From: Mytilus edulis
Taxonomy: Eukaryota
Reading direction: 5' to 3'
DNA: 64,000 nt
NCBI RefSeq assembly: GCF_963676685.1
Contig: NC_092344.1
Coordinates: forward strand, 83,328,001 to 83,392,000
Numbering within the stretch: the first letter of the stretch is position 1; each line of letters opens with the position of its first letter. Shown here one piece after another: positions 1 through 35,004 of the stretch. Below the pieces are notes generated by a model that had not been told where the DNA came from, searched no databases, and saw only the letters and a program-made list of their open reading frames with translations. The translations under genes were made by a program, and so were the position numbers.

Positions 1-3000
1 TACGAAAAAATGAGGCGAAAGACACCCATTTTTTATTTGATCATTAGGAAGATTTATGAAAACAGTTTCTAAAAAGGTATTACTCAAAGTCATTGAAATT
101 CTAGTTTGATCCAAATTTTGGGGGGGATATGTGACATGTCCACTCCCCTTTTTGCAATATTTTATGGTAAATAAATGCAGAATGTTGCCATGGATACACA
201 TAAAAGGAATTTATTTTCACTCTTTTAACTTTTGAAAATCAAATCTATGGAATATACTGATTACATACATATGCACATGTACAACACAAACAGTTAGGTA
301 AATGTATTAGAAATCCAGGAATAGGAGATGATAAAACATTTTGTGGCTCATTTTTAATTTTAATTTCTAACTGTGGAGTGCTACCTTATGGCACATCAGA
401 AAGCACAGAAATGCACTTTTTAAGATAAAATTGACCACAAATCTTTAGTCTTTTATGTTCTTGTTTTAGTTCTGAAGGTAAAAAATCTGCTAGGAATGCA
501 ATTTATGTTTATTTTATTGTTTACTGTCCTTAGCAACCAAATATACACATTTTGACACTTAGACATGTTGCGGTCTTAAATTTGTACTCCATTAGCTTCG
601 CCATTGTAACCAAAGATTGCGCTTTATATGATATCCTCAGAATGTATCGCTTTATATTTTTGAATGCGAATAAGTCAAGTAAACATTTTTAGCAGGATTT
701 CATATTATAATTTGGAATCAATTAAATTTAATGATGCCAGTACTGCTAGAAATTTATACCCTGCTTGAGAGCTTCTAAACCATGGTTAGGTATGCTATTT
801 ACAGCAAAATTGACCTATAAGTGCTTTCAAATACCTAAAAATTGTACAATTTGTCCTCTTTTAAGGTAATTTTATGATTTTAAATTAAGATAATGGGAAA
901 AGTTTTAGAAATTTACCCAAAAATGAGACAGACTTGAAGTTTTTCACTATGATCCAGCATTTATTTTTAAATCACTTTTTGTCGCGTTTCAACATCAACT
1001 GCTAACCTTCATAAAATCTTTATTACTGAACCAATTCTAAAAACTAAGGTACCATTTTCATCGTAACAGCTAGTAGAACACAGAAAATATAATAAAAATT
1101 GAGGCAGGAGGGGAAAAATTTCACCTTAAGGTAGCACTCCACAGTTAGGTGTGTAGTTTCGCATTTTGGCCCCTGTGGATTTTTCAAATATGAGAGCTAG
1201 TGTGCAATAAAATTCATTTTTGGATAGCTGAGTATTAAAATAGCCTTTGTATTGGGTTTATATGAACATCAAGAGTATGTAATGTATGTAATATAGGCTG
1301 TTTTCTGTATGACAGTCCGTATTTGCATGTCCCTACCATACATTGGTCCGGCAATTATTGTAATGTTTTTTTCCAACTTTTTATCGCACGAACTTTGTGA
1401 TTGGATTTTACGAAAAAATGAGGCGAAAGACACCCATTTTTTATTTGATCATTAGGAAGATTTATGAAAACAGTTTCTAAAAAGGTATTACTCAAAGTCA
1501 TTGAAATTCTAGTTTGATCCAAATTTTGGGGGGGATATGTGACATGTCCACTCCCCTTTTTGCAATATTTTATGGTAAATAAATGCAGAATGTTGCCATG
1601 GATACACATAAAAGGAATTTATTTTCACTCTTTTAACTTTTGAAAATCAAATCTATGGAATATACTGATTACATACATATGCACATGTACAACACAAACA
1701 GTTAGGTAAATGTATTAGAAATCCAGGAATAGGAGATGATAAAACATTTTGTGGCTCATTTTTAATTTTAATTTCTAACTGTGGAGTGCTACCTTATGGC
1801 ACATCAGAAAGCACAGAAATGCACTTTTTAAGATAAAATTGACCACAAATCTTTAGTCTTTTATGTTCTTGTTTTAGTTCTGAAGGTAAAAAATCTGCTA
1901 GGAATGCAATTTATGTTTATTTTATTGTTTACTGTCCTTAGCAACCAAATATACACATTTTGACACTTAGACATGTTGCGGTCTTAAATTTGTACTCCAT
2001 TAGCTTCGCCATTGTAACCAAAGATTGCGCTTTATATGATATCCTCAGAATGTATCGCTTTATATTTTTGAATGCGAATAAGTCAAGTAAACATTTTTAG
2101 CAGGATTTCATATTATAATTTGGAATCAATTAAATTTAATGATGCCAGTACTGCTAGAAATTTATACCCTGCTTGAGAGCTTCTAAACCATGGTTAGGTA
2201 TGCTATTTACAGCAAAATTGACCTATAAGTGCTTTCAAATACCTAAAAATTGTACAATTTGTCCTCTTTTAAGGTAATTTTATGATTTTAAATTAAGATA
2301 ATGGGAAAAGTTTTAGAAATTTACCCAAAAATGAGACAGACTTGAAGTTTTTCACTATGATCCAGCATTTATTTTTAAATCACTTTTTGTCGCGTTTCAA
2401 CATCAACTGCTAACCTTCATAAAATCTTTATTACTGAACCAATTCTAAAAACTAAGGTACCATTTTCATCGTAACAGCTAGTAGAACACAGAAAATATAA
2501 TAAAAATTGAGGCAGGAGGGGAAAAATTTCACCTTAAGGTAGCACTCCACAGTTAGGTGTGTAGTTTCGCATTTTGGCCCCTGTGGATTTTTCAAATATG
2601 AGAGCTAGTGTGCAATAAAATTCATTTTTGGATAGCTGAGTATTAAAATAGCCTTTGTATTGGGTTTATATGAACATCAAGAGTATGTAATGTATGTAAT
2701 ATAGGCTGTTTTCTGTATGACAGTCCGTATTTGCATGTCCCTACCATACATTGGTCCGGCAATTATTGTAATGTTTTTTTCCAACTTTTTATCGCACGAA
2801 CTTTGTGATTGGATTTTACGAAAAAATGAGGCGAAAGACACCCATTTTTTATTTGATCATTAGGAAGATTTATGAAAACAGTTTCTAAAAAGGTATTACT
2901 CAAAGTCATTGAAATTCTAGTTTGATCCAAATTTTGGGGGGGATATGTGACATGTCCACTCCCCTTTTTGCAATATTTTATGGTAAATAAATGCAGAATG

Positions 3001-6000
3001 TTGCCATGGATACACATAAAAGGAATTTATTTTCACTCTTTTAACTTTTGAAAATCAAATCTATGGAATATACTGATTACATACATATGCACATGTACAA
3101 CACAAACAGTTAGGTAAATGTATTAGAAATCCAGGAATAGGAGATGATAAAACATTTTGTGGCTCATTTTTAATTTTAATTTCTAACTGTGGAGTGCTAC
3201 CTTATGGCACATCAGAAAGCACAGAAATGCACTTTTTAAGATAAAATTGACCACAAATCTTTAGTCTTTTATGTTCTTGTTTTAGTTCTGAAGGTAAAAA
3301 ATCTGCTAGGAATGCAATTTATGTTTATTTTATTGTTTACTGTCCTTAGCAACCAAATATACACATTTTGACACTTAGACATGTTGCGGTCTTAAATTTG
3401 TACTCCATTAGCTTCGCCATTGTAACCAAAGATTGCGCTTTATATGATATCCTCAGAATGTATCGCTTTATATTTTTGAATGCGAATAAGTCAAGTAAAC
3501 ATTTTTAGCAGGATTTCATATTATAATTTGGAATCAATTAAATTTAATGATGCCAGTACTGCTAGAAATTTATACCCTGCTTGAGAGCTTCTAAACCATG
3601 GTTAGGTATGCTATTTACAGCAAAATTGACCTATAAGTGCTTTCAAATACCTAAAAATTGTACAATTTGTCCTCTTTTAAGGTAATTTTATGATTTTAAA
3701 TTAAGATAATGGGAAAAGTTTTAGAAATTTACCCAAAAATGAGACAGACTTGAAGTTTTTCACTATGATCCAGCATTTATTTTTAAATCACTTTTTGTCG
3801 CGTTTCAACATCAACTGCTAACCTTCATAAAATCTTTATTACTGAACCAATTCTAAAAACTAAGGTACCATTTTCATCGTAACAGCTAGTAGAACACAGA
3901 AAATATAATAAAAATTGAGGCAGGAGGGGAAAAATTTCACCTTAAGGTAGCACTCCACAGTTAGGTGTGTAGTTTCGCATTTTGGCCCCTGTGGATTTTT
4001 CAAATATGAGAGCTAGTGTGCAATAAAATTCATTTTTGGATAGCTGAGTATTAAAATAGCCTTTGTATTGGGTTTATATGAACATCAAGAGTATGTAATG
4101 TATGTAATATAGGCTGTTTTCTGTATGACAGTCCGTATTTGCATGTCCCTACCATACATTGGTCCGGCAATTATTGTAATGTTTTTTTCCAACTTTTTAT
4201 CGCACGAACTTTGTGATTGGATTTTACGAAAAAATGAGGCGAAAGACACCCATTTTTTATTTGATCATTAGGAAGATTTATGAAAACAGTTTCTAAAAAG
4301 GTATTACTCAAAGTCATTGAAATTCTAGTTTGATCCAAATTTTGGGGGGGATATGTGACATGTCCACTCCCCTTTTTGCAATATTTTATGGTAAATAAAT
4401 GCAGAATGTTGCCATGGATACACATAAAAGGAATTTATTTTCACTCTTTTAACTTTTGAAAATCAAATCTATGGAATATACTGATTACATACATATGCAC
4501 ATGTACAACACAAACAGTTAGGTAAATGTATTAGAAATCCAGGAATAGGAGATGATAAAACATTTTGTGGCTCATTTTTAATTTTAATTTCTAACTGTGG
4601 AGTGCTACCTTATGGCACATCAGAAAGCACAGAAATGCACTTTTTAAGATAAAATTGACCACAAATCTTTAGTCTTTTATGTTCTTGTTTTAGTTCTGAA
4701 GGTAAAAAATCTGCTAGGAATGCAATTTATGTTTATTTTATTGTTTACTGTCCTTAGCAACCAAATATACACATTTTGACACTTAGACATGTTGCGGTCT
4801 TAAATTTGTACTCCATTAGCTTCGCCATTGTAACCAAAGATTGCGCTTTATATGATATCCTCAGAATGTATCGCTTTATATTTTTGAATGCGAATAAGTC
4901 AAGTAAACATTTTTAGCAGGATTTCATATTATAATTTGGAATCAATTAAATTTAATGATGCCAGTACTGCTAGAAATTTATACCCTGCTTGAGAGCTTCT
5001 AAACCATGGTTAGGTATGCTATTTACAGCAAAATTGACCTATAAGTGCTTTCAAATACCTAAAAATTGTACAATTTGTCCTCTTTTAAGGTAATTTTATG
5101 ATTTTAAATTAAGATAATGGGAAAAGTTTTAGAAATTTACCCAAAAATGAGACAGACTTGAAGTTTTTCACTATGATCCAGCATTTATTTTTAAATCACT
5201 TTTTGTCGCGTTTCAACATCAACTGCTAACCTTCATAAAATCTTTATTACTGAACCAATTCTAAAAACTAAGGTACCATTTTCATCGTAACAGCTAGTAG
5301 AACACAGAAAATATAATAAAAATTGAGGCAGGAGGGGAAAAATTTCACCTTAAGGTAGCACTCCACAGTTAGGTGTGTAGTTTCGCATTTTGGCCCCTGT
5401 GGATTTTTCAAATATGAGAGCTAGTGTGCAATAAAATTCATTTTTGGATAGCTGAGTATTAAAATAGCCTTTGTATTGGGTTTATATGAACATCAAGAGT
5501 ATGTAATGTATGTAATATAGGCTGTTTTCTGTATGACAGTCCGTATTTGCATGTCCCTACCATACATTGGTCCGGCAATTATTGTAATGTTTTTTTCCAA
5601 CTTTTTATCGCACGAACTTTGTGATTGGATTTTACGAAAAAATGAGGCGAAAGACACCCATTTTTTATTTGATCATTAGGAAGATTTATGAAAACAGTTT
5701 CTAAAAAGGTATTACTCAAAGTCATTGAAATTCTAGTTTGATCCAAATTTTGGGGGGGATATGTGACATGTCCACTCCCCTTTTTGCAATATTTTATGGT
5801 AAATAAATGCAGAATGTTGCCATGGATACACATAAAAGGAATTTATTTTCACTCTTTTAACTTTTGAAAATCAAATCTATGGAATATACTGATTACATAC
5901 ATATGCACATGTACAACACAAACAGTTAGGTAAATGTATTAGAAATCCAGGAATAGGAGATGATAAAACATTTTGTGGCTCATTTTTAATTTTAATTTCT

Positions 6001-9000
6001 AACTGTGGAGTGCTACCTTATGGCACATCAGAAAGCACAGAAATGCACTTTTTAAGATAAAATTGACCACAAATCTTTAGTCTTTTATGTTCTTGTTTTA
6101 GTTCTGAAGGTAAAAAATCTGCTAGGAATGCAATTTATGTTTATTTTATTGTTTACTGTCCTTAGCAACCAAATATACACATTTTGACACTTAGACATGT
6201 TGCGGTCTTAAATTTGTACTCCATTAGCTTCGCCATTGTAACCAAAGATTGCGCTTTATATGATATCCTCAGAATGTATCGCTTTATATTTTTGAATGCG
6301 AATAAGTCAAGTAAACATTTTTAGCAGGATTTCATATTATAATTTGGAATCAATTAAATTTAATGATGCCAGTACTGCTAGAAATTTATACCCTGCTTGA
6401 GAGCTTCTAAACCATGGTTAGGTATGCTATTTACAGCAAAATTGACCTATAAGTGCTTTCAAATACCTAAAAATTGTACAATTTGTCCTCTTTTAAGGTA
6501 ATTTTATGATTTTAAATTAAGATAATGGGAAAAGTTTTAGAAATTTACCCAAAAATGAGACAGACTTGAAGTTTTTCACTATGATCCAGCATTTATTTTT
6601 AAATCACTTTTTGTCGCGTTTCAACATCAACTGCTAACCTTCATAAAATCTTTATTACTGAACCAATTCTAAAAACTAAGGTACCATTTTCATCGTAACA
6701 GCTAGTAGAACACAGAAAATATAATAAAAATTGAGGCAGGAGGGGAAAAATTTCACCTTAAGGTAGCACTCCACAGTTAGGTGTGTAGTTTCGCATTTTG
6801 GCCCCTGTGGATTTTTCAAATATGAGAGCTAGTGTGCAATAAAATTCATTTTTGGATAGCTGAGTATTAAAATAGCCTTTGTATTGGGTTTATATGAACA
6901 TCAAGAGTATGTAATGTATGTAATATAGGCTGTTTTCTGTATGACAGTCCGTATTTGCATGTCCCTACCATACATTGGTCCGGCAATTATTGTAATGTTT
7001 TTTTCCAACTTTTTATCGCACGAACTTTGTGATTGGATTTTACGAAAAAATGAGGCGAAAGACACCCATTTTTTATTTGATCATTAGGAAGATTTATGAA
7101 AACAGTTTCTAAAAAGGTATTACTCAAAGTCATTGAAATTCTAGTTTGATCCAAATTTTGGGGGGGATATGTGACATGTCCACTCCCCTTTTTGCAATAT
7201 TTTATGGTAAATAAATGCAGAATGTTGCCATGGATACACATAAAAGGAATTTATTTTCACTCTTTTAACTTTTGAAAATCAAATCTATGGAATATACTGA
7301 TTACATACATATGCACATGTACAACACAAACAGTTAGGTAAATGTATTAGAAATCCAGGAATAGGAGATGATAAAACATTTTGTGGCTCATTTTTAATTT
7401 TAATTTCTAACTGTGGAGTGCTACCTTATGGCACATCAGAAAGCACAGAAATGCACTTTTTAAGATAAAATTGACCACAAATCTTTAGTCTTTTATGTTC
7501 TTGTTTTAGTTCTGAAGGTAAAAAATCTGCTAGGAATGCAATTTATGTTTATTTTATTGTTTACTGTCCTTAGCAACCAAATATACACATTTTGACACTT
7601 AGACATGTTGCGGTCTTAAATTTGTACTCCATTAGCTTCGCCATTGTAACCAAAGATTGCGCTTTATATGATATCCTCAGAATGTATCGCTTTATATTTT
7701 TGAATGCGAATAAGTCAAGTAAACATTTTTAGCAGGATTTCATATTATAATTTGGAATCAATTAAATTTAATGATGCCAGTACTGCTAGAAATTTATACC
7801 CTGCTTGAGAGCTTCTAAACCATGGTTAGGTATGCTATTTACAGCAAAATTGACCTATAAGTGCTTTCAAATACCTAAAAATTGTACAATTTGTCCTCTT
7901 TTAAGGTAATTTTATGATTTTAAATTAAGATAATGGGAAAAGTTTTAGAAATTTACCCAAAAATGAGACAGACTTGAAGTTTTTCACTATGATCCAGCAT
8001 TTATTTTTAAATCACTTTTTGTCGCGTTTCAACATCAACTGCTAACCTTCATAAAATCTTTATTACTGAACCAATTCTAAAAACTAAGGTACCATTTTCA
8101 TCGTAACAGCTAGTAGAACACAGAAAATATAATAAAAATTGAGGCAGGAGGGGAAAAATTTCACCTTAAGGTAGCACTCCACAGTTAGGTGTGTAGTTTC
8201 GCATTTTGGCCCCTGTGGATTTTTCAAATATGAGAGCTAGTGTGCAATAAAATTCATTTTTGGATAGCTGAGTATTAAAATAGCCTTTGTATTGGGTTTA
8301 TATGAACATCAAGAGTATGTAATGTATGTAATATAGGCTGTTTTCTGTATGACAGTCCGTATTTGCATGTCCCTACCATACATTGGTCCGGCAATTATTG
8401 TAATGTTTTTTTCCAACTTTTTATCGCACGAACTTTGTGATTGGATTTTACGAAAAAATGAGGCGAAAGACACCCATTTTTTATTTGATCATTAGGAAGA
8501 TTTATGAAAACAGTTTCTAAAAAGGTATTACTCAAAGTCATTGAAATTCTAGTTTGATCCAAATTTTGGGGGGGATATGTGACATGTCCACTCCCCTTTT
8601 TGCAATATTTTATGGTAAATAAATGCAGAATGTTGCCATGGATACACATAAAAGGAATTTATTTTCACTCTTTTAACTTTTGAAAATCAAATCTATGGAA
8701 TATACTGATTACATACATATGCACATGTACAACACAAACAGTTAGGTAAATGTATTAGAAATCCAGGAATAGGAGATGATAAAACATTTTGTGGCTCATT
8801 TTTAATTTTAATTTCTAACTGTGGAGTGCTACCTTATGGCACATCAGAAAGCACAGAAATGCACTTTTTAAGATAAAATTGACCACAAATCTTTAGTCTT
8901 TTATGTTCTTGTTTTAGTTCTGAAGGTAAAAAATCTGCTAGGAATGCAATTTATGTTTATTTTATTGTTTACTGTCCTTAGCAACCAAATATACACATTT

Positions 9001-10245
9001 TGACACTTAGACATGTTGCGGTCTTAAATTTGTACTCCATTAGCTTCGCCATTGTAACCAAAGATTGCGCTTTATATGATATCCTCAGAATGTATCGCTT
9101 TATATTTTTGAATGCGAATAAGTCAAGTAAACATTTTTAGCAGGATTTCATATTATAATTTGGAATCAATTAAATTTAATGATGCCAGTACTGCTAGAAA
9201 TTTATACCCTGCTTGAGAGCTTCTAAACCATGGTTAGGTATGCTATTTACAGCAAAATTGACCTATAAGTGCTTTCAAATACCTAAAAATTGTACAATTT
9301 GTCCTCTTTTAAGGTAATTTTATGATTTTAAATTAAGATAATGGGAAAAGTTTTAGAAATTTACCCAAAAATGAGACAGACTTGAAGTTTTTCACTATGA
9401 TCCAGCATTTATTTTTAAATCACTTTTTGTCGCGTTTCAACATCAACTGCTAACCTTCATAAAATCTTTATTACTGAACCAATTCTAAAAACTAAGGTAC
9501 CATTTTCATCGTAACAGCTAGTAGAACACAGAAAATATAATAAAAATTGAGGCAGGAGGGGAAAAATTTCACCTTAAGGTAGCACTCCACAGTTAGGTGT
9601 GTAGTTTCGCATTTTGGCCCCTGTGGATTTTTCAAATATGAGAGCTAGTGTGCAATAAAATTCATTTTTGGATAGCTGAGTATTAAAATAGCCTTTGTAT
9701 TGGGTTTATATGAACATCAAGAGTATGTAATGTATGTAATATAGGCTGTTTTCTGTATGACAGTCCGTATTTGCATGTCCCTACCATACATTGGTCCGGC
9801 AATTATTGTAATGTTTTTTTCCAACTTTTTATCGCACGAACTTTGTGATTGGATTTTACGAAAAAATGAGGCGAAAGACACCCATTTTTTATTTGATCAT
9901 TAGGAAGATTTATGAAAACAGTTTCTAAAAAGGTATTACTCAAAGTCATTGAAATTCTAGTTTGATCCAAATTTTGGGGGGGATATGTGACATGTCCACT
10001 CCCCTTTTTGCAATATTTTATGGTAAATAAATGCAGAATGTTGCCATGGATACACATAAAAGGAATTTATTTTCACTCTTTTAACTTTTGAAAATCAAAT
10101 CTATGGAATATACTGATTACATACATATGCACATGTACAACACAAACAGTTAGGTAAATGTATTAGAAATCCAGGAATAGGAGATGATAAAACATTTTGT
10201 GGCTCATTTTTAATTTTAATTTCTAACTGTGGAGTGCTACCTTAA
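1..10245. repeat. Tandem array with a 1408-bp unit (about 7.3 units visible, continues off the left edge); unit = 664-bp TIR-bounded module + 744-bp spacer
   Basis: The same sequence recurs every 1408 bp, and the identical 84-aa ORF appears at 1355, 2763 ... 9803. The array stops exactly at the TIR ctaactgtggagtgctacc (10241), followed by TTAA (10242-10245). Confidence 0.97.
1130..1793. mobile_element. Kolobok(P)-type 664-bp module (LTDR-like); further copies start at 2538, 3946, 5354, 6762, 8170 and 9578, with a partial copy at 1-385
   Basis: Perfect 19-bp TIRs ggtagcactccacagttag (1130-1148) and ctaactgtggagtgctacc (1775-1793). Preceded by TTAA and followed by TTAT internally, or TTAA for the last copy. 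RR...YY termini plus TTAA are the Kolobok signature. Confidence 0.75.
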
Positions 10246-11284
10246 GACTGAGACCAGACAAAGCCGTTTGCAATGCGACAAAGCGGACCGTGATAGTATT
10301 ACGTTCCGACAGTATCTGCTCATCCCGATTATGCCGACAGTTTTCGAACGGATAACTTCCGTCAGCGTCGGTTCACTCTCTGGTCACTCTCTGATCTCTG
10401 TCGGATTAAAATCGGTAGAATCGGGACGCAGTCGTAACAGACTCGGTCGAATTTTACCTAGCGAAAGATACAAATTGGATTAGAAGCGGATTGAGAACGG
10501 GATTATCGGGACAAATTCGCTAGGAAACGGTTGAATGTCGACGCTTCCTCAACAATATCTGATTGTTGTCGTGATAAATTATTTGCTTTACAAATTTTAA
10601 TCAAAGTTTAAAGGAGTAGGTTCAGTAAGACCCCTTTTTGGCCCCAAAATATAGCAGTTTTACAAAATTGTTAAAATGTAAACCTGTAGTTATTTATTGG
10701 ACAGTAGAATGCTTAAGTATGGACTGTTTTTGACAATACAATGCACATATATCCGGTACTAGCACCATTAAGTCATGCTAAATTACTGAAATCCTCATAA
10801 TTCTAGCATTTTAGTTAAATTTTAGACGGTTTTCGTGTAAAACGAAAGTGGCCGCATTCGTGTTCATCCTTAATATTGAAATGTAAGTTGTATTTTTGAT
10901 AATACATAACATATATAAAGGTTGAGGATGAACACGGATGCGGCCACTTTCATTTTTACCAAAAACCATCTGAAAAGTGACATTTTTCGGCATATTAGGT
11001 AGATTTTTCATATTTGAGCTTGAATCGGATCGTTTTTAATGACTAAATCTGTTAAAATCTTTCACATAAACTAATTAATTCAAATAAAATAGACACTTAA
11101 GTGTTTAAAAAGTGGTCAAAATCTTTCGTCAGATGAACCTGAAATTTGAGGCCAAAATCGGTCCTTACCGGACCTACTCCTTTCCATCCACGATACACAG
11201 GAATTTGGTCAGACTTATGACAAATTTTAATCGGGAATGGTCCTGTCAAGGACGGCAGTTAAAATCGTGAAAGTGACCCCAGCT
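10246..11284. mobile_element. Right part of a probable non-autonomous PIF/Harbinger-type element, host of the array and of a 570-bp MITE
   Basis: CG-rich subterminal-like sequence ending aaaatcgtgaaagtgaccccagct|TAA, which resembles the Harbinger end at 34550-34580. The left end is not in the window. Confidence 0.4.
10612..11181. mobile_element. Kolobok-like non-autonomous element (570 bp)
   Basis: TIR aggagtaggttcagtaag vs cttaccggacctactcct (16/18 match). Left flank is TTAA; right flank is degenerate (TTCC). Confidence 0.65.
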
Positions 11285-33815: not shown

Positions 33816-35004
33816 TCATTTGTTAAATATTCCTATTTGTAAAACATTCGCAAAGCACTCGCAAAGCAGTCGCAAAGTATTCGTATACATTCGTAAAGCA
33901 ATCGGATATATTCGTAAAGCACTCGCGTGAATTCGTATCAATTCGTTAATCCATCGCAAAGCGATCGTAAACTGCTCGCAACTATTCGTAAATGAATCGT
34001 TAAACATTCTTAAATCAAACTGTTCACGATTTCTTGCGAATGATTTACGAGTTGTTGCGATCGGTTAACGATGCATTAACGAATTGTTGCGAGTGATTTG
34101 CGAGCTCTTTACGAATGAAATGATTCGTGGACATTCGTGTAAAATTTTTGGCATGTCCAAAAATTTCCAAATAGTTTTACGAATCGATACGATTGTCTGC
34201 GAATGTCTACGATTTGTTTAAGAGTGGTTTACGATTGCTTGCGAGTGATTTACGATTGCTTGCGAGTGGTTTACGATTGCTTGCGAATGCTTGCATTTGA
34301 TAAAACAAACAACATTCGTAAGGAATCGTAAGACACATTCGTGTATGTGAAGGGGGTATAAACATCGGACGCACCTTCGGGGATTTTTTAACATGTTAAA
34401 AAATTTAGAACCCTTCCTGAAGTTGTCCCCGAAGGCTAGAAAAAGTGGCCGATGGTTCTACGATGGTTAAAGATGACACTACGAATAGCCCGATCTGGAT
34501 ACGATCAGTCCCGATTTTGAAAATTTCCATAATCGTGTTGCCATCGGCGTAAAAATCGGGACAGTGTGACGCGGGCATAAGAGGCTGCAATACATATTAA
34601 CTTGTCCTCCATAAGAAATTTCGTTTTGGTTAGCGGTGTCCTAATATATTTTTGTAATAGATACTAATAAAAATCAGATATCTGTCAATTTTTTTCGGAC
34701 GTTTATTATGAGGGATCTACTTAGAGATGAGCCATTATATTGTTTAAATACAAATACAAATTATTCAGCTACGGTACTGTGATTTGAAGTAAAGATTTTA
34801 AACTTTTCTACATAAGAAAATGCCTGTAACAAGTAAGAAATATGACAGTTGTGGTACATTCGTCTGATGTGTTTGAGCTTTCGATTTTGTCATTTGGTTA
34901 GGGCATTTCCATGTTTAATTTTCTTCAGAGTTCATTATTTTTGTGATTTTACTTTTCTTTTGAGATGGCCATGGTGTGAAAATCAATGTATGACAGAGAT
35001 ATAA

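What the first reader, a model, noticed from the sequence alone, without database searches (positions are those of the whole stretch)
1..10245. The 1408-bp 'satellite' is a concatemer of a composite-like (KolobokP-type) transposon: (LTDR-INT)n-LTDR
Seen: each unit is a 664-bp module with perfect 19-bp TIRs plus a 744-bp non-coding spacer. Internal junctions are TTAA|module|TTAT, and the array ends precisely at a module TIR followed by a clean TTAA. Known: KolobokP elements, abundant in bivalves, have an internal region between long terminal direct repeats of about 450 or about 660 bp that carry their own short TIRs, and they target TTAA. Inference: a non-autonomous KolobokP with a minimal internal region has been amplified into at least 8 LTDRs, by unequal LTDR recombination or integration of a multimeric circle. 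This would be a transposon caught turning into a macrosatellite.
Basis: partly seen in the sequence, partly recalled or inferred. Interest (0 to 1): 0.8.

Follow-up and report, generated by a model that had tools for sequence, protein, structure and literature searches.

The report
KolobokP transposon grown into macrosatellite
The 1408-base repeat is a head-to-tail string of a small non-coding KolobokP-type jumping gene of mussels. This kind of element and its habit of forming such strings were described in 2022, so it is an unusually long and uniform example of a known thing.

Summary
Window 1-10244 holds 7.28 copies of a 1408-bp unit with no difference between copies. Each unit is a 664-bp module with perfect 19-bp terminal inverted repeats (TIRs) plus a 744-bp spacer. 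The array ends at a module end followed by TTA(A).

The KolobokP reading is supported.
- Genome-wide, the module occurs as solo copies, as module-spacer-module monomers of about 2071 bp, and as dimers.
- Two complete arrays on the same chromosome have 12 and 21 modules.
- 14 of 15 elements checked are flanked by a perfect 3-bp target-site duplication (TTA or TAA, once CAA), not a 4-bp TTAA.
- The architecture matches the published family KolobokP-N1_MyEd (2070 bp, LTDR 663 bp, TSD 3 bp). Both parts are homologous to it by eye, on the opposite strand, at roughly 70-80%.

New facts:
- The array runs 47 kb left of the window. It totals at least 57.6 kb and 41 modules, and contains an assembly gap.
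- An unplaced 14-kb contig is made of the same units.
- The left end lies inside the spacer, but it is a secondary break. A cut-off spacer is joined to a cut-off host repeat through 2 shared bases, and half of the target repeat is missing.

Multimers of this kind were described by Kojima and Bao (2022).

The parts
1..10244 (-). Right-hand 10.2 kb of a tandem array (LTDR-INT)n-LTDR of a non-autonomous KolobokP-type element. The whole array is C1:83280681-83338244. The strand given is the orientation of the published KolobokP-N1_MyEd consensus, which matches the window's minus strand.
   Evidence: period 1408, 0 mismatches; extent; orientation, by eye.
1..385 (-). LTDR copy cut by the window edge (LTDR positions 280-664).
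   Evidence: TIR at 367-385.
386..1129 (-). INT (the 744-bp non-coding 'spacer'). It starts TTATGGCAC and ends CACCTTAA. Identical copies lie at 1794-2537, 3202-3945, 4610-5353, 6018-6761, 7426-8169 and 8834-9577.
   Evidence: 688 and 667 exact LTDR/INT junctions genome-wide; no ORF of 50 aa or more lies within INT, and there is no Rfam match in the unit.
1130..1793 (-). LTDR (the 664-bp module), termini GG...CC. Identical copies lie at 2538-3201, 3946-4609, 5354-6017, 6762-7425, 8170-8833 and 9578-10241.
   Evidence: Solo copies with 3-bp TSDs elsewhere.
1130..1148 (+). Left 19-bp TIR, GGTAGCACTCCACAGTTAG.
   Evidence: (2137 exact genome hits, 0 in the control).
1775..1793 (+). Right 19-bp TIR, the perfect reverse complement of 1130-1148.
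1154..1178 (-). Subterminal motif (minus strand: CCACAGGGGCCAAAATGCGAAACTA). A similar motif sits near the 3' end of published ~660-bp LTDRs from Mytilus, Dreissena and Mercenaria.
   Evidence: By eye, comparing with the supplement text.
9578..10241 (-). Terminal LTDR that closes the array on the right.
10242..10244 (.). TTA, the surviving copy of the 3-bp target-site duplication. The matching left copy has been lost.
   Evidence: The family's TSD is TTA/TAA in 13 of 15 elements checked.
10246..10612 (+). Downstream half of the high-copy host repeat into which the element inserted. Its upstream half is missing on the left of the array.
   Evidence: alignment A1.

Best explanation
The array is one insertion of a non-autonomous, composite-like KolobokP DNA transposon. 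The monomer is LTDR-INT-LTDR = 664+744+664 = 2072 bp, a relative of KolobokP-N1_MyEd. It landed in a host repeat at a TTA.

It then grew in place to at least 41 LTDRs by repeated unequal exchange between the direct LTDR/INT units. Sister-chromatid or allelic crossover could do this, possibly started by breaks. That would keep the units identical.

Its left terminus, together with the upstream half of the target repeat, was later lost in a deletion or rearrangement. The repair joined a cut-off INT to a cut-off copy of another repeat through 2 shared bases.

Movement of the family depends on a KolobokP transposase supplied in trans, because the unit encodes nothing.

Shown: the anatomy, the family-wide spectrum of insertions with 3-bp TSDs, the extent of the array, the nature of both flanks, and the homology to the published family. 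Inferred: in-place growth by unequal exchange, the order of events, and mobilisation in trans.
For: Structure. 29 of 40 full units are identical and 3 share one T>C. 8 units beside the N gap carry only 1-bp indels that look like consensus errors.

Family behaviour: 2137 exact TIRs, of which 688 + 667 are LTDR/INT junctions and 782 abut other DNA. On chromosome 1, one search shows monomers at 16.135, 35.653, 39.337, 43.726, 51.742, 57.310 and 58.577 Mb. It also shows solo LTDRs and a dimer.

Perfect 3-bp TSDs were found in 12 of 13 of these small elements. They were also found around two complete arrays: (LTDR-INT)11-LTDR at 13.74 Mb and (LTDR-INT)20-LTDR at 115.79 Mb.

Each array has its own fixed period (1408, 1407, 1408), while loci differ from one another by 2-9%. 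This fits growth after insertion.

The T>C variant is scattered among units: 18, 22 and 24 on C1, and TTTTCCTTCC on contig C1742. This fits continuing exchange of blocks of 1-4 units.

Published match: KolobokP-N1_MyEd is 2070 bp with LTDR 663 and TSD 3. Its LTDR and INT consensus are homologous to the minus strand of our unit by eye. Multimers, solo LTDRs and INT-INT junctions are described for KolobokP.

Reads of another individual show the joint that skips LTDR+4 bp.

Left end.
Against: - No transposase-bearing partner with this LTDR was found. No pair of LTDRs about 4.3 kb apart appears in the listed part of chromosome 1. A TIR of the KolobokP-3_MyEd type has only 2 near-hits.
- The comparison with the published consensus was by eye only, at roughly 70-80%, and the text came from a PDF that drops letters.
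- The left junction and the array length could not be checked with the assembly's own reads. The array contains a gap, and both flanks are high-copy repeats.
- Perfect identity of units fits a single burst, such as a rolling circle, as well as it fits unequal exchange.
Confidence: 0.85

Rival explanations
1. The concatemer was made outside the chromosome. An LTDR-INT circle (a 'translocatable unit') was copied by rolling-circle replication and integrated as a ready-made multimer. One end was made by the transposase and the other by end-joining.
For: The units are identical. One end is exactly at a TIR and the other is an illegitimate junction with 2-bp microhomology. Kojima and Bao discuss a circular LTDR-INT intermediate.
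Against: The upstream half of the target repeat is missing, which points to loss of DNA at the site rather than a one-ended entry. Two other arrays are complete with TSDs at both ends. The T>C variant is scattered among units, which needs exchange after formation in any case.
Confidence: 0.1
2. It is an ordinary satellite that arose by tandem duplication of a MITE together with its unique host flank.
For: The left end of the array lies inside the spacer.
Against: The spacer is attached to the module at hundreds of sites. Module-spacer-module monomers carry 3-bp TSDs at independent loci. The spacer is homologous to the published INT of KolobokP-N1_MyEd. The array holds a non-integral number of units: it starts at unit position 809 and ends at 388 in window numbering. 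That does not fit a duplication of one fixed segment.
Confidence: 0.02
3. Part of what is seen is an assembly product. The array length, the perfect identity or the left junction come from collapsing, over-polishing or a misjoin in a repeat that long reads could not span.
For: There is a 100-N gap inside the array. 1-bp indel 'errors' occur in the 8 units next to it. An unplaced contig consists of the same units. Both flanks are high-copy repeats. Letters typical of this array are rare or absent in reads and contigs of four other runs.
Against: The left junction lies inside a contig, 7 clean units away from the error-rich stretch. A real single-base variant is kept in some units in different patterns on C1 and C1742, which argues against blanket homogenisation. 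Other arrays of the family assemble with both ends and TSDs.
Confidence: 0.1

Closest known systems
KolobokP-N1_MyEd (non-autonomous KolobokP of Mytilus edulis; Kojima & Bao 2022, PMC9587614, Table S1 and Data S1)
   Same: The architecture is almost identical: 2070 vs 2072 bp, LTDR 663 vs 664 bp, INT 744 vs 744 bp, TSD 3 bp, TIR about 20 bp, and hundreds of LTDR and INT copies. LTDR and INT share many words with the minus strand of our unit.
   Different: Similarity by eye is only about 70-80%, and the TIR differs (ggtagcaataaaacag... against GGTAGCACTCCACAG...). This is a sister subfamily or family rather than the same consensus. No computed alignment was possible.
KolobokP multimers (LTDR-INT)n-LTDR in general, e.g. 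KolobokP-7N2_CorFlu (664-bp LTDR, 30 multimers)
   Same: Neighbouring units share one LTDR, and TSDs sit at the outer ends. Solo LTDRs, monomers and multimers coexist, and INT-INT joints occur where an LTDR has been lost.
   Different: This array is longer: at least 41 LTDRs and 57.6 kb, with identical units. The paper's main text gives no multimer sizes beyond trimers and tetramers. One end of this array is truncated.
Canonical Kolobok superfamily DNA transposons
   Same: Termini are 5'-RR...YY-3', and the target is AT-rich and resembles TTAA.
   Different: The TSD is 3 bp (TTA/TAA/CAA), not a 4-bp TTAA. The element has a composite architecture with long terminal direct repeats.
Tandem arrays of TRIM/Cassandra LTR retroelements, and Helentron-carried satellite-like repeats of oysters (PMC6934838, PMC7492417)
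   Same: In these too, a small non-autonomous mobile element with direct repeats turns into tandem arrays.
   Different: Those are retroelements or rolling-circle elements. Here the repeats carry TIRs and short TSDs typical of a cut-and-paste DDD/E transposon.
IS26-type pseudo-compound transposons and translocatable units of bacteria
   Same: The layout is direct repeats of a TIR-bounded element around a passenger segment, and arrays can be made by adding repeat+passenger units.
   Different: This is only an analogy. Here the repeats encode nothing, and the transposase (when present) lies in the internal region.

Membership tests
KolobokP (composite-like Kolobok lineage) | [quoted passage not shown] | tested here: met
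   Monomers LTDR-INT-LTDR of about 2071 bp occur at 7 listed sites on C1. The array units have the same layout.
KolobokP (composite-like Kolobok lineage) | Each LTDR has its own short TIRs (11-18 bp or a little more) | tested here: met
   Perfect 19-bp TIRs.
KolobokP (composite-like Kolobok lineage) | Terminal dinucleotides 5'-RR and YY-3' | tested here: met
   GG...CC; criterion taken.
KolobokP (composite-like Kolobok lineage) | LTDR length of about 450 bp or about 660 bp | tested here: met
   664 bp; criterion taken.
KolobokP (composite-like Kolobok lineage) | TSD of 3-5 bp (3 bp in most families with ~660-bp LTDRs) | tested here: met
   Perfect 3-bp TSD in 14 of 15 elements checked. Table S1.
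KolobokP (composite-like Kolobok lineage) | Solo LTDRs and multimers occur beside monomers | tested here: met
   Five solo LTDRs with TSDs, a sixth without a clean one, one dimer, and arrays of 12, 21 and at least 41 LTDRs.
KolobokP (composite-like Kolobok lineage) | Sequence similarity to a published KolobokP family | tested here: inconclusive
   Clear by eye to KolobokP-N1_MyEd LTDR and INT, and to the ends of KolobokP-3_MyEd. It was not computed, because the published sequence could not be handed to a script.
KolobokP (composite-like Kolobok lineage) | [quoted passage not shown] | not tested
   The unit has no ORF over 84 aa. No partner was located. A protein query from the paper could not be used.
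Canonical Kolobok superfamily | 4-bp TTAA target-site duplication | tested here: not met
   TSDs are 3 bp: TTA x8, TAA x4 (two of them one duplicated insertion), CAA x1, plus TTA at two arrays.
Plain satellite from a duplicated MITE plus host flank | Spacer is unique host DNA found with the module only at this locus | tested here: not met
   688 and 667 exact module/spacer junctions across the genome. The spacer lies inside TSD-flanked monomers.

The most novel reading that the evidence does not exclude
KolobokP multimers may not arise only by stepwise unequal crossover. This array has perfectly identical units, one transposase-type end and one end-joined end. It could be the footprint of an extrachromosomal LTDR-INT concatemer (rolling-circle copy of a translocatable unit) captured at a chromosome break. 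That would be a route by which a cut-and-paste transposon founds a macrosatellite in one step.
Probability: 0.08. Interest if true: 0.6.

Novelty: new member of a known kind. Interest (0 to 1): 0.3.

Why it matters
It gives a clean, well-bounded example of a DNA transposon becoming a macrosatellite of tens of kilobases. The array has at least 41 identical 1.4-kb units. Sister arrays of 12 and 21 LTDRs on the same chromosome still carry their target-site duplications. The set could serve to measure how fast KolobokP multimers grow, and to test the unequal-crossover and circle models proposed in 2022. It also warns annotators that '1.4-kb satellites' in mussel assemblies may be KolobokP multimers. 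It does not reveal a new kind of element.

Tried and rejected
- Tandem Repeats Finder missed the array because its longest period is 500.
I worked with 40 kb and then with 36-bp flanks.
- Exact plus-strand words of our unit were not found in the paper's supplement. The published consensus lies on the other strand and is diverged.
- I then located the entries by name and read them. In one search a 27-letter string shown was typed back, only to find its passage.
- An 18-letter TIR of autonomous KolobokP-3_MyEd, read, was searched in the genome with up to 1 mismatch. It gave only 2 hits and no partner element.
- Reads could not bridge the left junction. The flank is a repeat of several hundred copies, and the sampled raw run gave about 1.4x depth.
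- The continuation of the left-flank repeat and the upstream half of the right-flank repeat were sought on the other side of the array. Neither was found.
- In the unit, the longest ORF is 84 aa and there is no Rfam match.
- 'MITE plus duplicated flank' was rejected.
- I did not type the joined INT-INT sequence as a genome pattern, and I did not align the published consensus in a script. Both need sequence that may not be typed.
Full report
OBSERVATION

The window opens inside a tandem array with a period of 1408 bp. It holds 7.28 copies, and no copy differs from another by a single base. Periodicity ends at 10244/10245.

Each unit has two parts:
- A 664-bp module (for example 1130-1793), bounded by perfect 19-bp inverted repeats: GGTAGCACTCCACAGTTAG and its reverse complement.
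- A 744-bp spacer (for example 386-1129).

The junctions read CACCTTAA|GGTAGC and GCTACC|TTATGGCAC. The last module ends at 10241 and is followed by TTAA.

The unit is AT-rich (31% G+C). Its longest ORF is 84 aa, and it has no Rfam match.

EXTENT

The window is G000:C1:83328001-83392000. The array continues to the left as far as C1:83280681. In the assembly it measures 57,564 bp, includes a 100-N gap at 83298354-83298453, and contains 41 modules.

Of the 40 full units:
- 29 are identical.
- 3 (units 18, 22, 24) share one T>C at unit position 782.
- 8, next to the gap, differ only by single-base indels that look like consensus errors at contig ends.

An unplaced contig, C1742 (14,308 bp), consists wholly of the same units. 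It carries the same T>C in 4 of 10 units, in the order TTTTCCTTCC. It comes from the same array, either from the missing stretch or from the other haplotype. The true length of the array is therefore unknown and probably larger.

WHAT THE MODULE AND SPACER ARE

The exact TIR occurs 2137 times in the 1.37-Gb genome, against 0 for the reversed control. These hits divide as follows:
- 688 continue into the spacer's start.
- 667 continue into the spacer's end.
- 782 abut something else.

The coordinates on chromosome 1 show every form expected of a composite element:
- Single modules.
- Module-spacer-module monomers of about 2071 bp at 16.135, 35.653, 39.337, 43.726, 51.742, 57.310 and 58.577 Mb.
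- A dimer at 25.136 Mb.
- Further arrays at 13.74 Mb (12 modules, period 1408), 41.95 Mb (at least 8) and 115.79 Mb (21 modules, period 1407).

I fetched 36-bp flanks to look for target-site duplications. 12 of 13 monomers, solo modules and the dimer have a perfect 3-bp duplication: TTA seven times, TAA four times, CAA once. Two of the TTA/TAA monomers are one insertion inside an inverted segmental duplication.

The arrays at 13.74 and 115.79 Mb both begin and end with a full module, and both are flanked by TTA...TTA.

Copies at other loci are 91-98% identical to our unit.

So the spacer is not host DNA. It is the internal region of a mobile element whose ends are direct repeats of the module.

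COMPARISON WITH KolobokP

Kojima and Bao (2022, PMC9587614) define KolobokP by these features:
- An internal region between long terminal direct repeats (LTDRs) of about 450 or about 660 bp.
- Short TIRs on each LTDR, with termini 5'-RR...YY-3'.
- TSDs of 3-5 bp.
- Frequent solo LTDRs.
- (LTDR-INT)n-LTDR multimers that share LTDRs and keep their outer TSDs.

All of these were tested here and met.

Their Table S1 lists a non-autonomous family of Mytilus edulis, KolobokP-N1_MyEd. It is 2070 bp long with a 663-bp LTDR, a 3-bp TSD, and 642 LTDR and 276 INT copies. Our monomer is 664+744+664 = 2072 bp.

The published LTDR and the last 620 bases of the published INT are homologous to the reverse complement of our module and spacer. 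Words shared with the LTDR include:
- aaaaatccacaggggccaaaa
- tgcgaaacta
- atccatggcaaca
- tctgcatttattt
- ataaaatattgcaaaaagggg

Words shared with the INT include:
- aacgcgacaaaaa
- gctaaggac
- gtaaacaataaaat
- the ending gccataa

I judge the similarity at roughly 70-80%. That estimate is by eye only. The published text may not be typed into a script, and it comes from a PDF that drops letters.

Two further resemblances:
- The termini of the autonomous KolobokP-3_MyEd (ggtagcaatcacagttag ... ctaactgtgtattgtacc) are close to ours.
- A subterminal GGGGCC...GCGAAACT motif recurs in ~660-bp LTDRs of Dreissena and Mercenaria.

Earlier notes of this scan call the genome a blue-mussel genome. That agrees with these matches, with the 14 large contigs and with the composition. 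I did not test it further.

THE TWO ENDS

Right end. The DNA after the array (10246-10612) is a copy of a high-copy host repeat. Four other copies of that repeat continue for at least 120 bp upstream of the point where our module ends. So the element sits inside that repeat, at a site reading ..AATAC|GACTGAG in the uninterrupted copies.

Left end. The array starts at the window-equivalent of position 809, which is 424 bases into INT. The DNA to its left is a copy of another high-copy repeat. In other copies that repeat continues ...gttgatt|AAAAAATACTCC, whereas here it reads ...gttgatt|AATTGACC.

The junction therefore joins two truncated sequences through 2 shared bases (AA). The upstream half of the right-flank repeat is absent from the 12.7 kb to the left.

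The simplest history is a normal insertion with TSDs, then growth, then loss of the left terminus and adjoining DNA by a deletion or rearrangement repaired by end-joining. But the conclusion it was meant to support, a duplicated MITE plus flank, is excluded by the genome-wide evidence.

READS

Runs labelled with four organism codes hold the words of the array. In a raw Illumina run sampled at about 1.4x, depth over the unit is 250-400. The family is therefore abundant there too.

Letters that mark our array are rare in that run. At L062 positions 3644 and 5052 (the same unit position), only 5 of 759 reads carry them, where 41 units would give about 58. So this particular array is not shared at this size by that animal.

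Ten reads and one contig show a joint that skips 668 bases, which is the LTDR plus 4. This is the INT-INT joint that the paper ascribes to LTDR loss.

The left junction itself could not be confirmed, because its flank is a repeat of several hundred copies.

MECHANISM

Shown:
- The element is a TSD-making, TIR-bounded composite.
- Arrays keep their outer TSDs.
- Each array has its own fixed period, while loci differ by 2-9%.
- A point variant is scattered among units.

Inferred:
- Growth occurred in place by unequal exchange between units, as proposed in the paper, and is still going on.
- The element moves by a KolobokP transposase supplied in trans.
- The left end was lost secondarily.

A ready-made concatemer from a circular intermediate cannot be excluded (about 0.1).

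No autonomous partner was found. No LTDR pair about 4.3 kb apart appears in the listed part of chromosome 1. There are only two near-matches to the KolobokP-3_MyEd TIR.

VERDICT

The thing is a diverged relative of a published non-autonomous KolobokP family, in the multimer form already described for that lineage. It is notable only for its length, its perfect uniformity and its broken left end.

Noticed in passing
window 10246-10612 and 11181-11281: A copy of a high-copy host repeat (2292 first-look candidates, 91-93% identity). Relative to other copies it is split by a nested insert of about 568 bp at 10613-11180. The KolobokP array is inserted inside this repeat.
   Followed up: partly
L062:2165-2680 (C1:83280165-83280680): Another high-copy repeat (2614 first-look candidates, 94-95% identity), truncated exactly at the array's left junction. 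In a sampled Illumina run, read depth over L062:1401-2680 is 60-900 against about 1.4 for single-copy DNA.
   Followed up: partly
G000:C1742 (loci L001-L005, L031-L036): Unplaced 14,308-bp contig made only of the same 1408-bp units. The T>C variant at unit position 782 occurs in 4 of 10 units (TTTTCCTTCC). It is probably part of this array or of its allele.
   Followed up: yes
L077/L078 (C1:39.337 Mb) and L083/L084 (C1:57.310 Mb): Two monomers whose flanks are reverse complements of each other. This is one insertion carried in an inverted segmental duplication 18 Mb apart.
   Followed up: no
L072 (C1:53517800-53521600): A rearranged multimer. At locus position 1474-1488, INT is followed by the first 17 bases of an LTDR and then jumps to INT position 620. 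This internal deletion removes most of an LTDR and most of an INT.
   Followed up: no
L065, L066 (C1:115.79 Mb array): The terminal LTDRs of this 21-LTDR array are about 96% identical to our unit, while the next inner LTDR is about 99%. This is the edge effect expected if inner units are homogenised by unequal exchange.
   Followed up: no
window 33844-34294: Several short arrays of 21-bp and 42-bp tandem repeats (TRF scores 52-139), unrelated to the finding.
   Followed up: no
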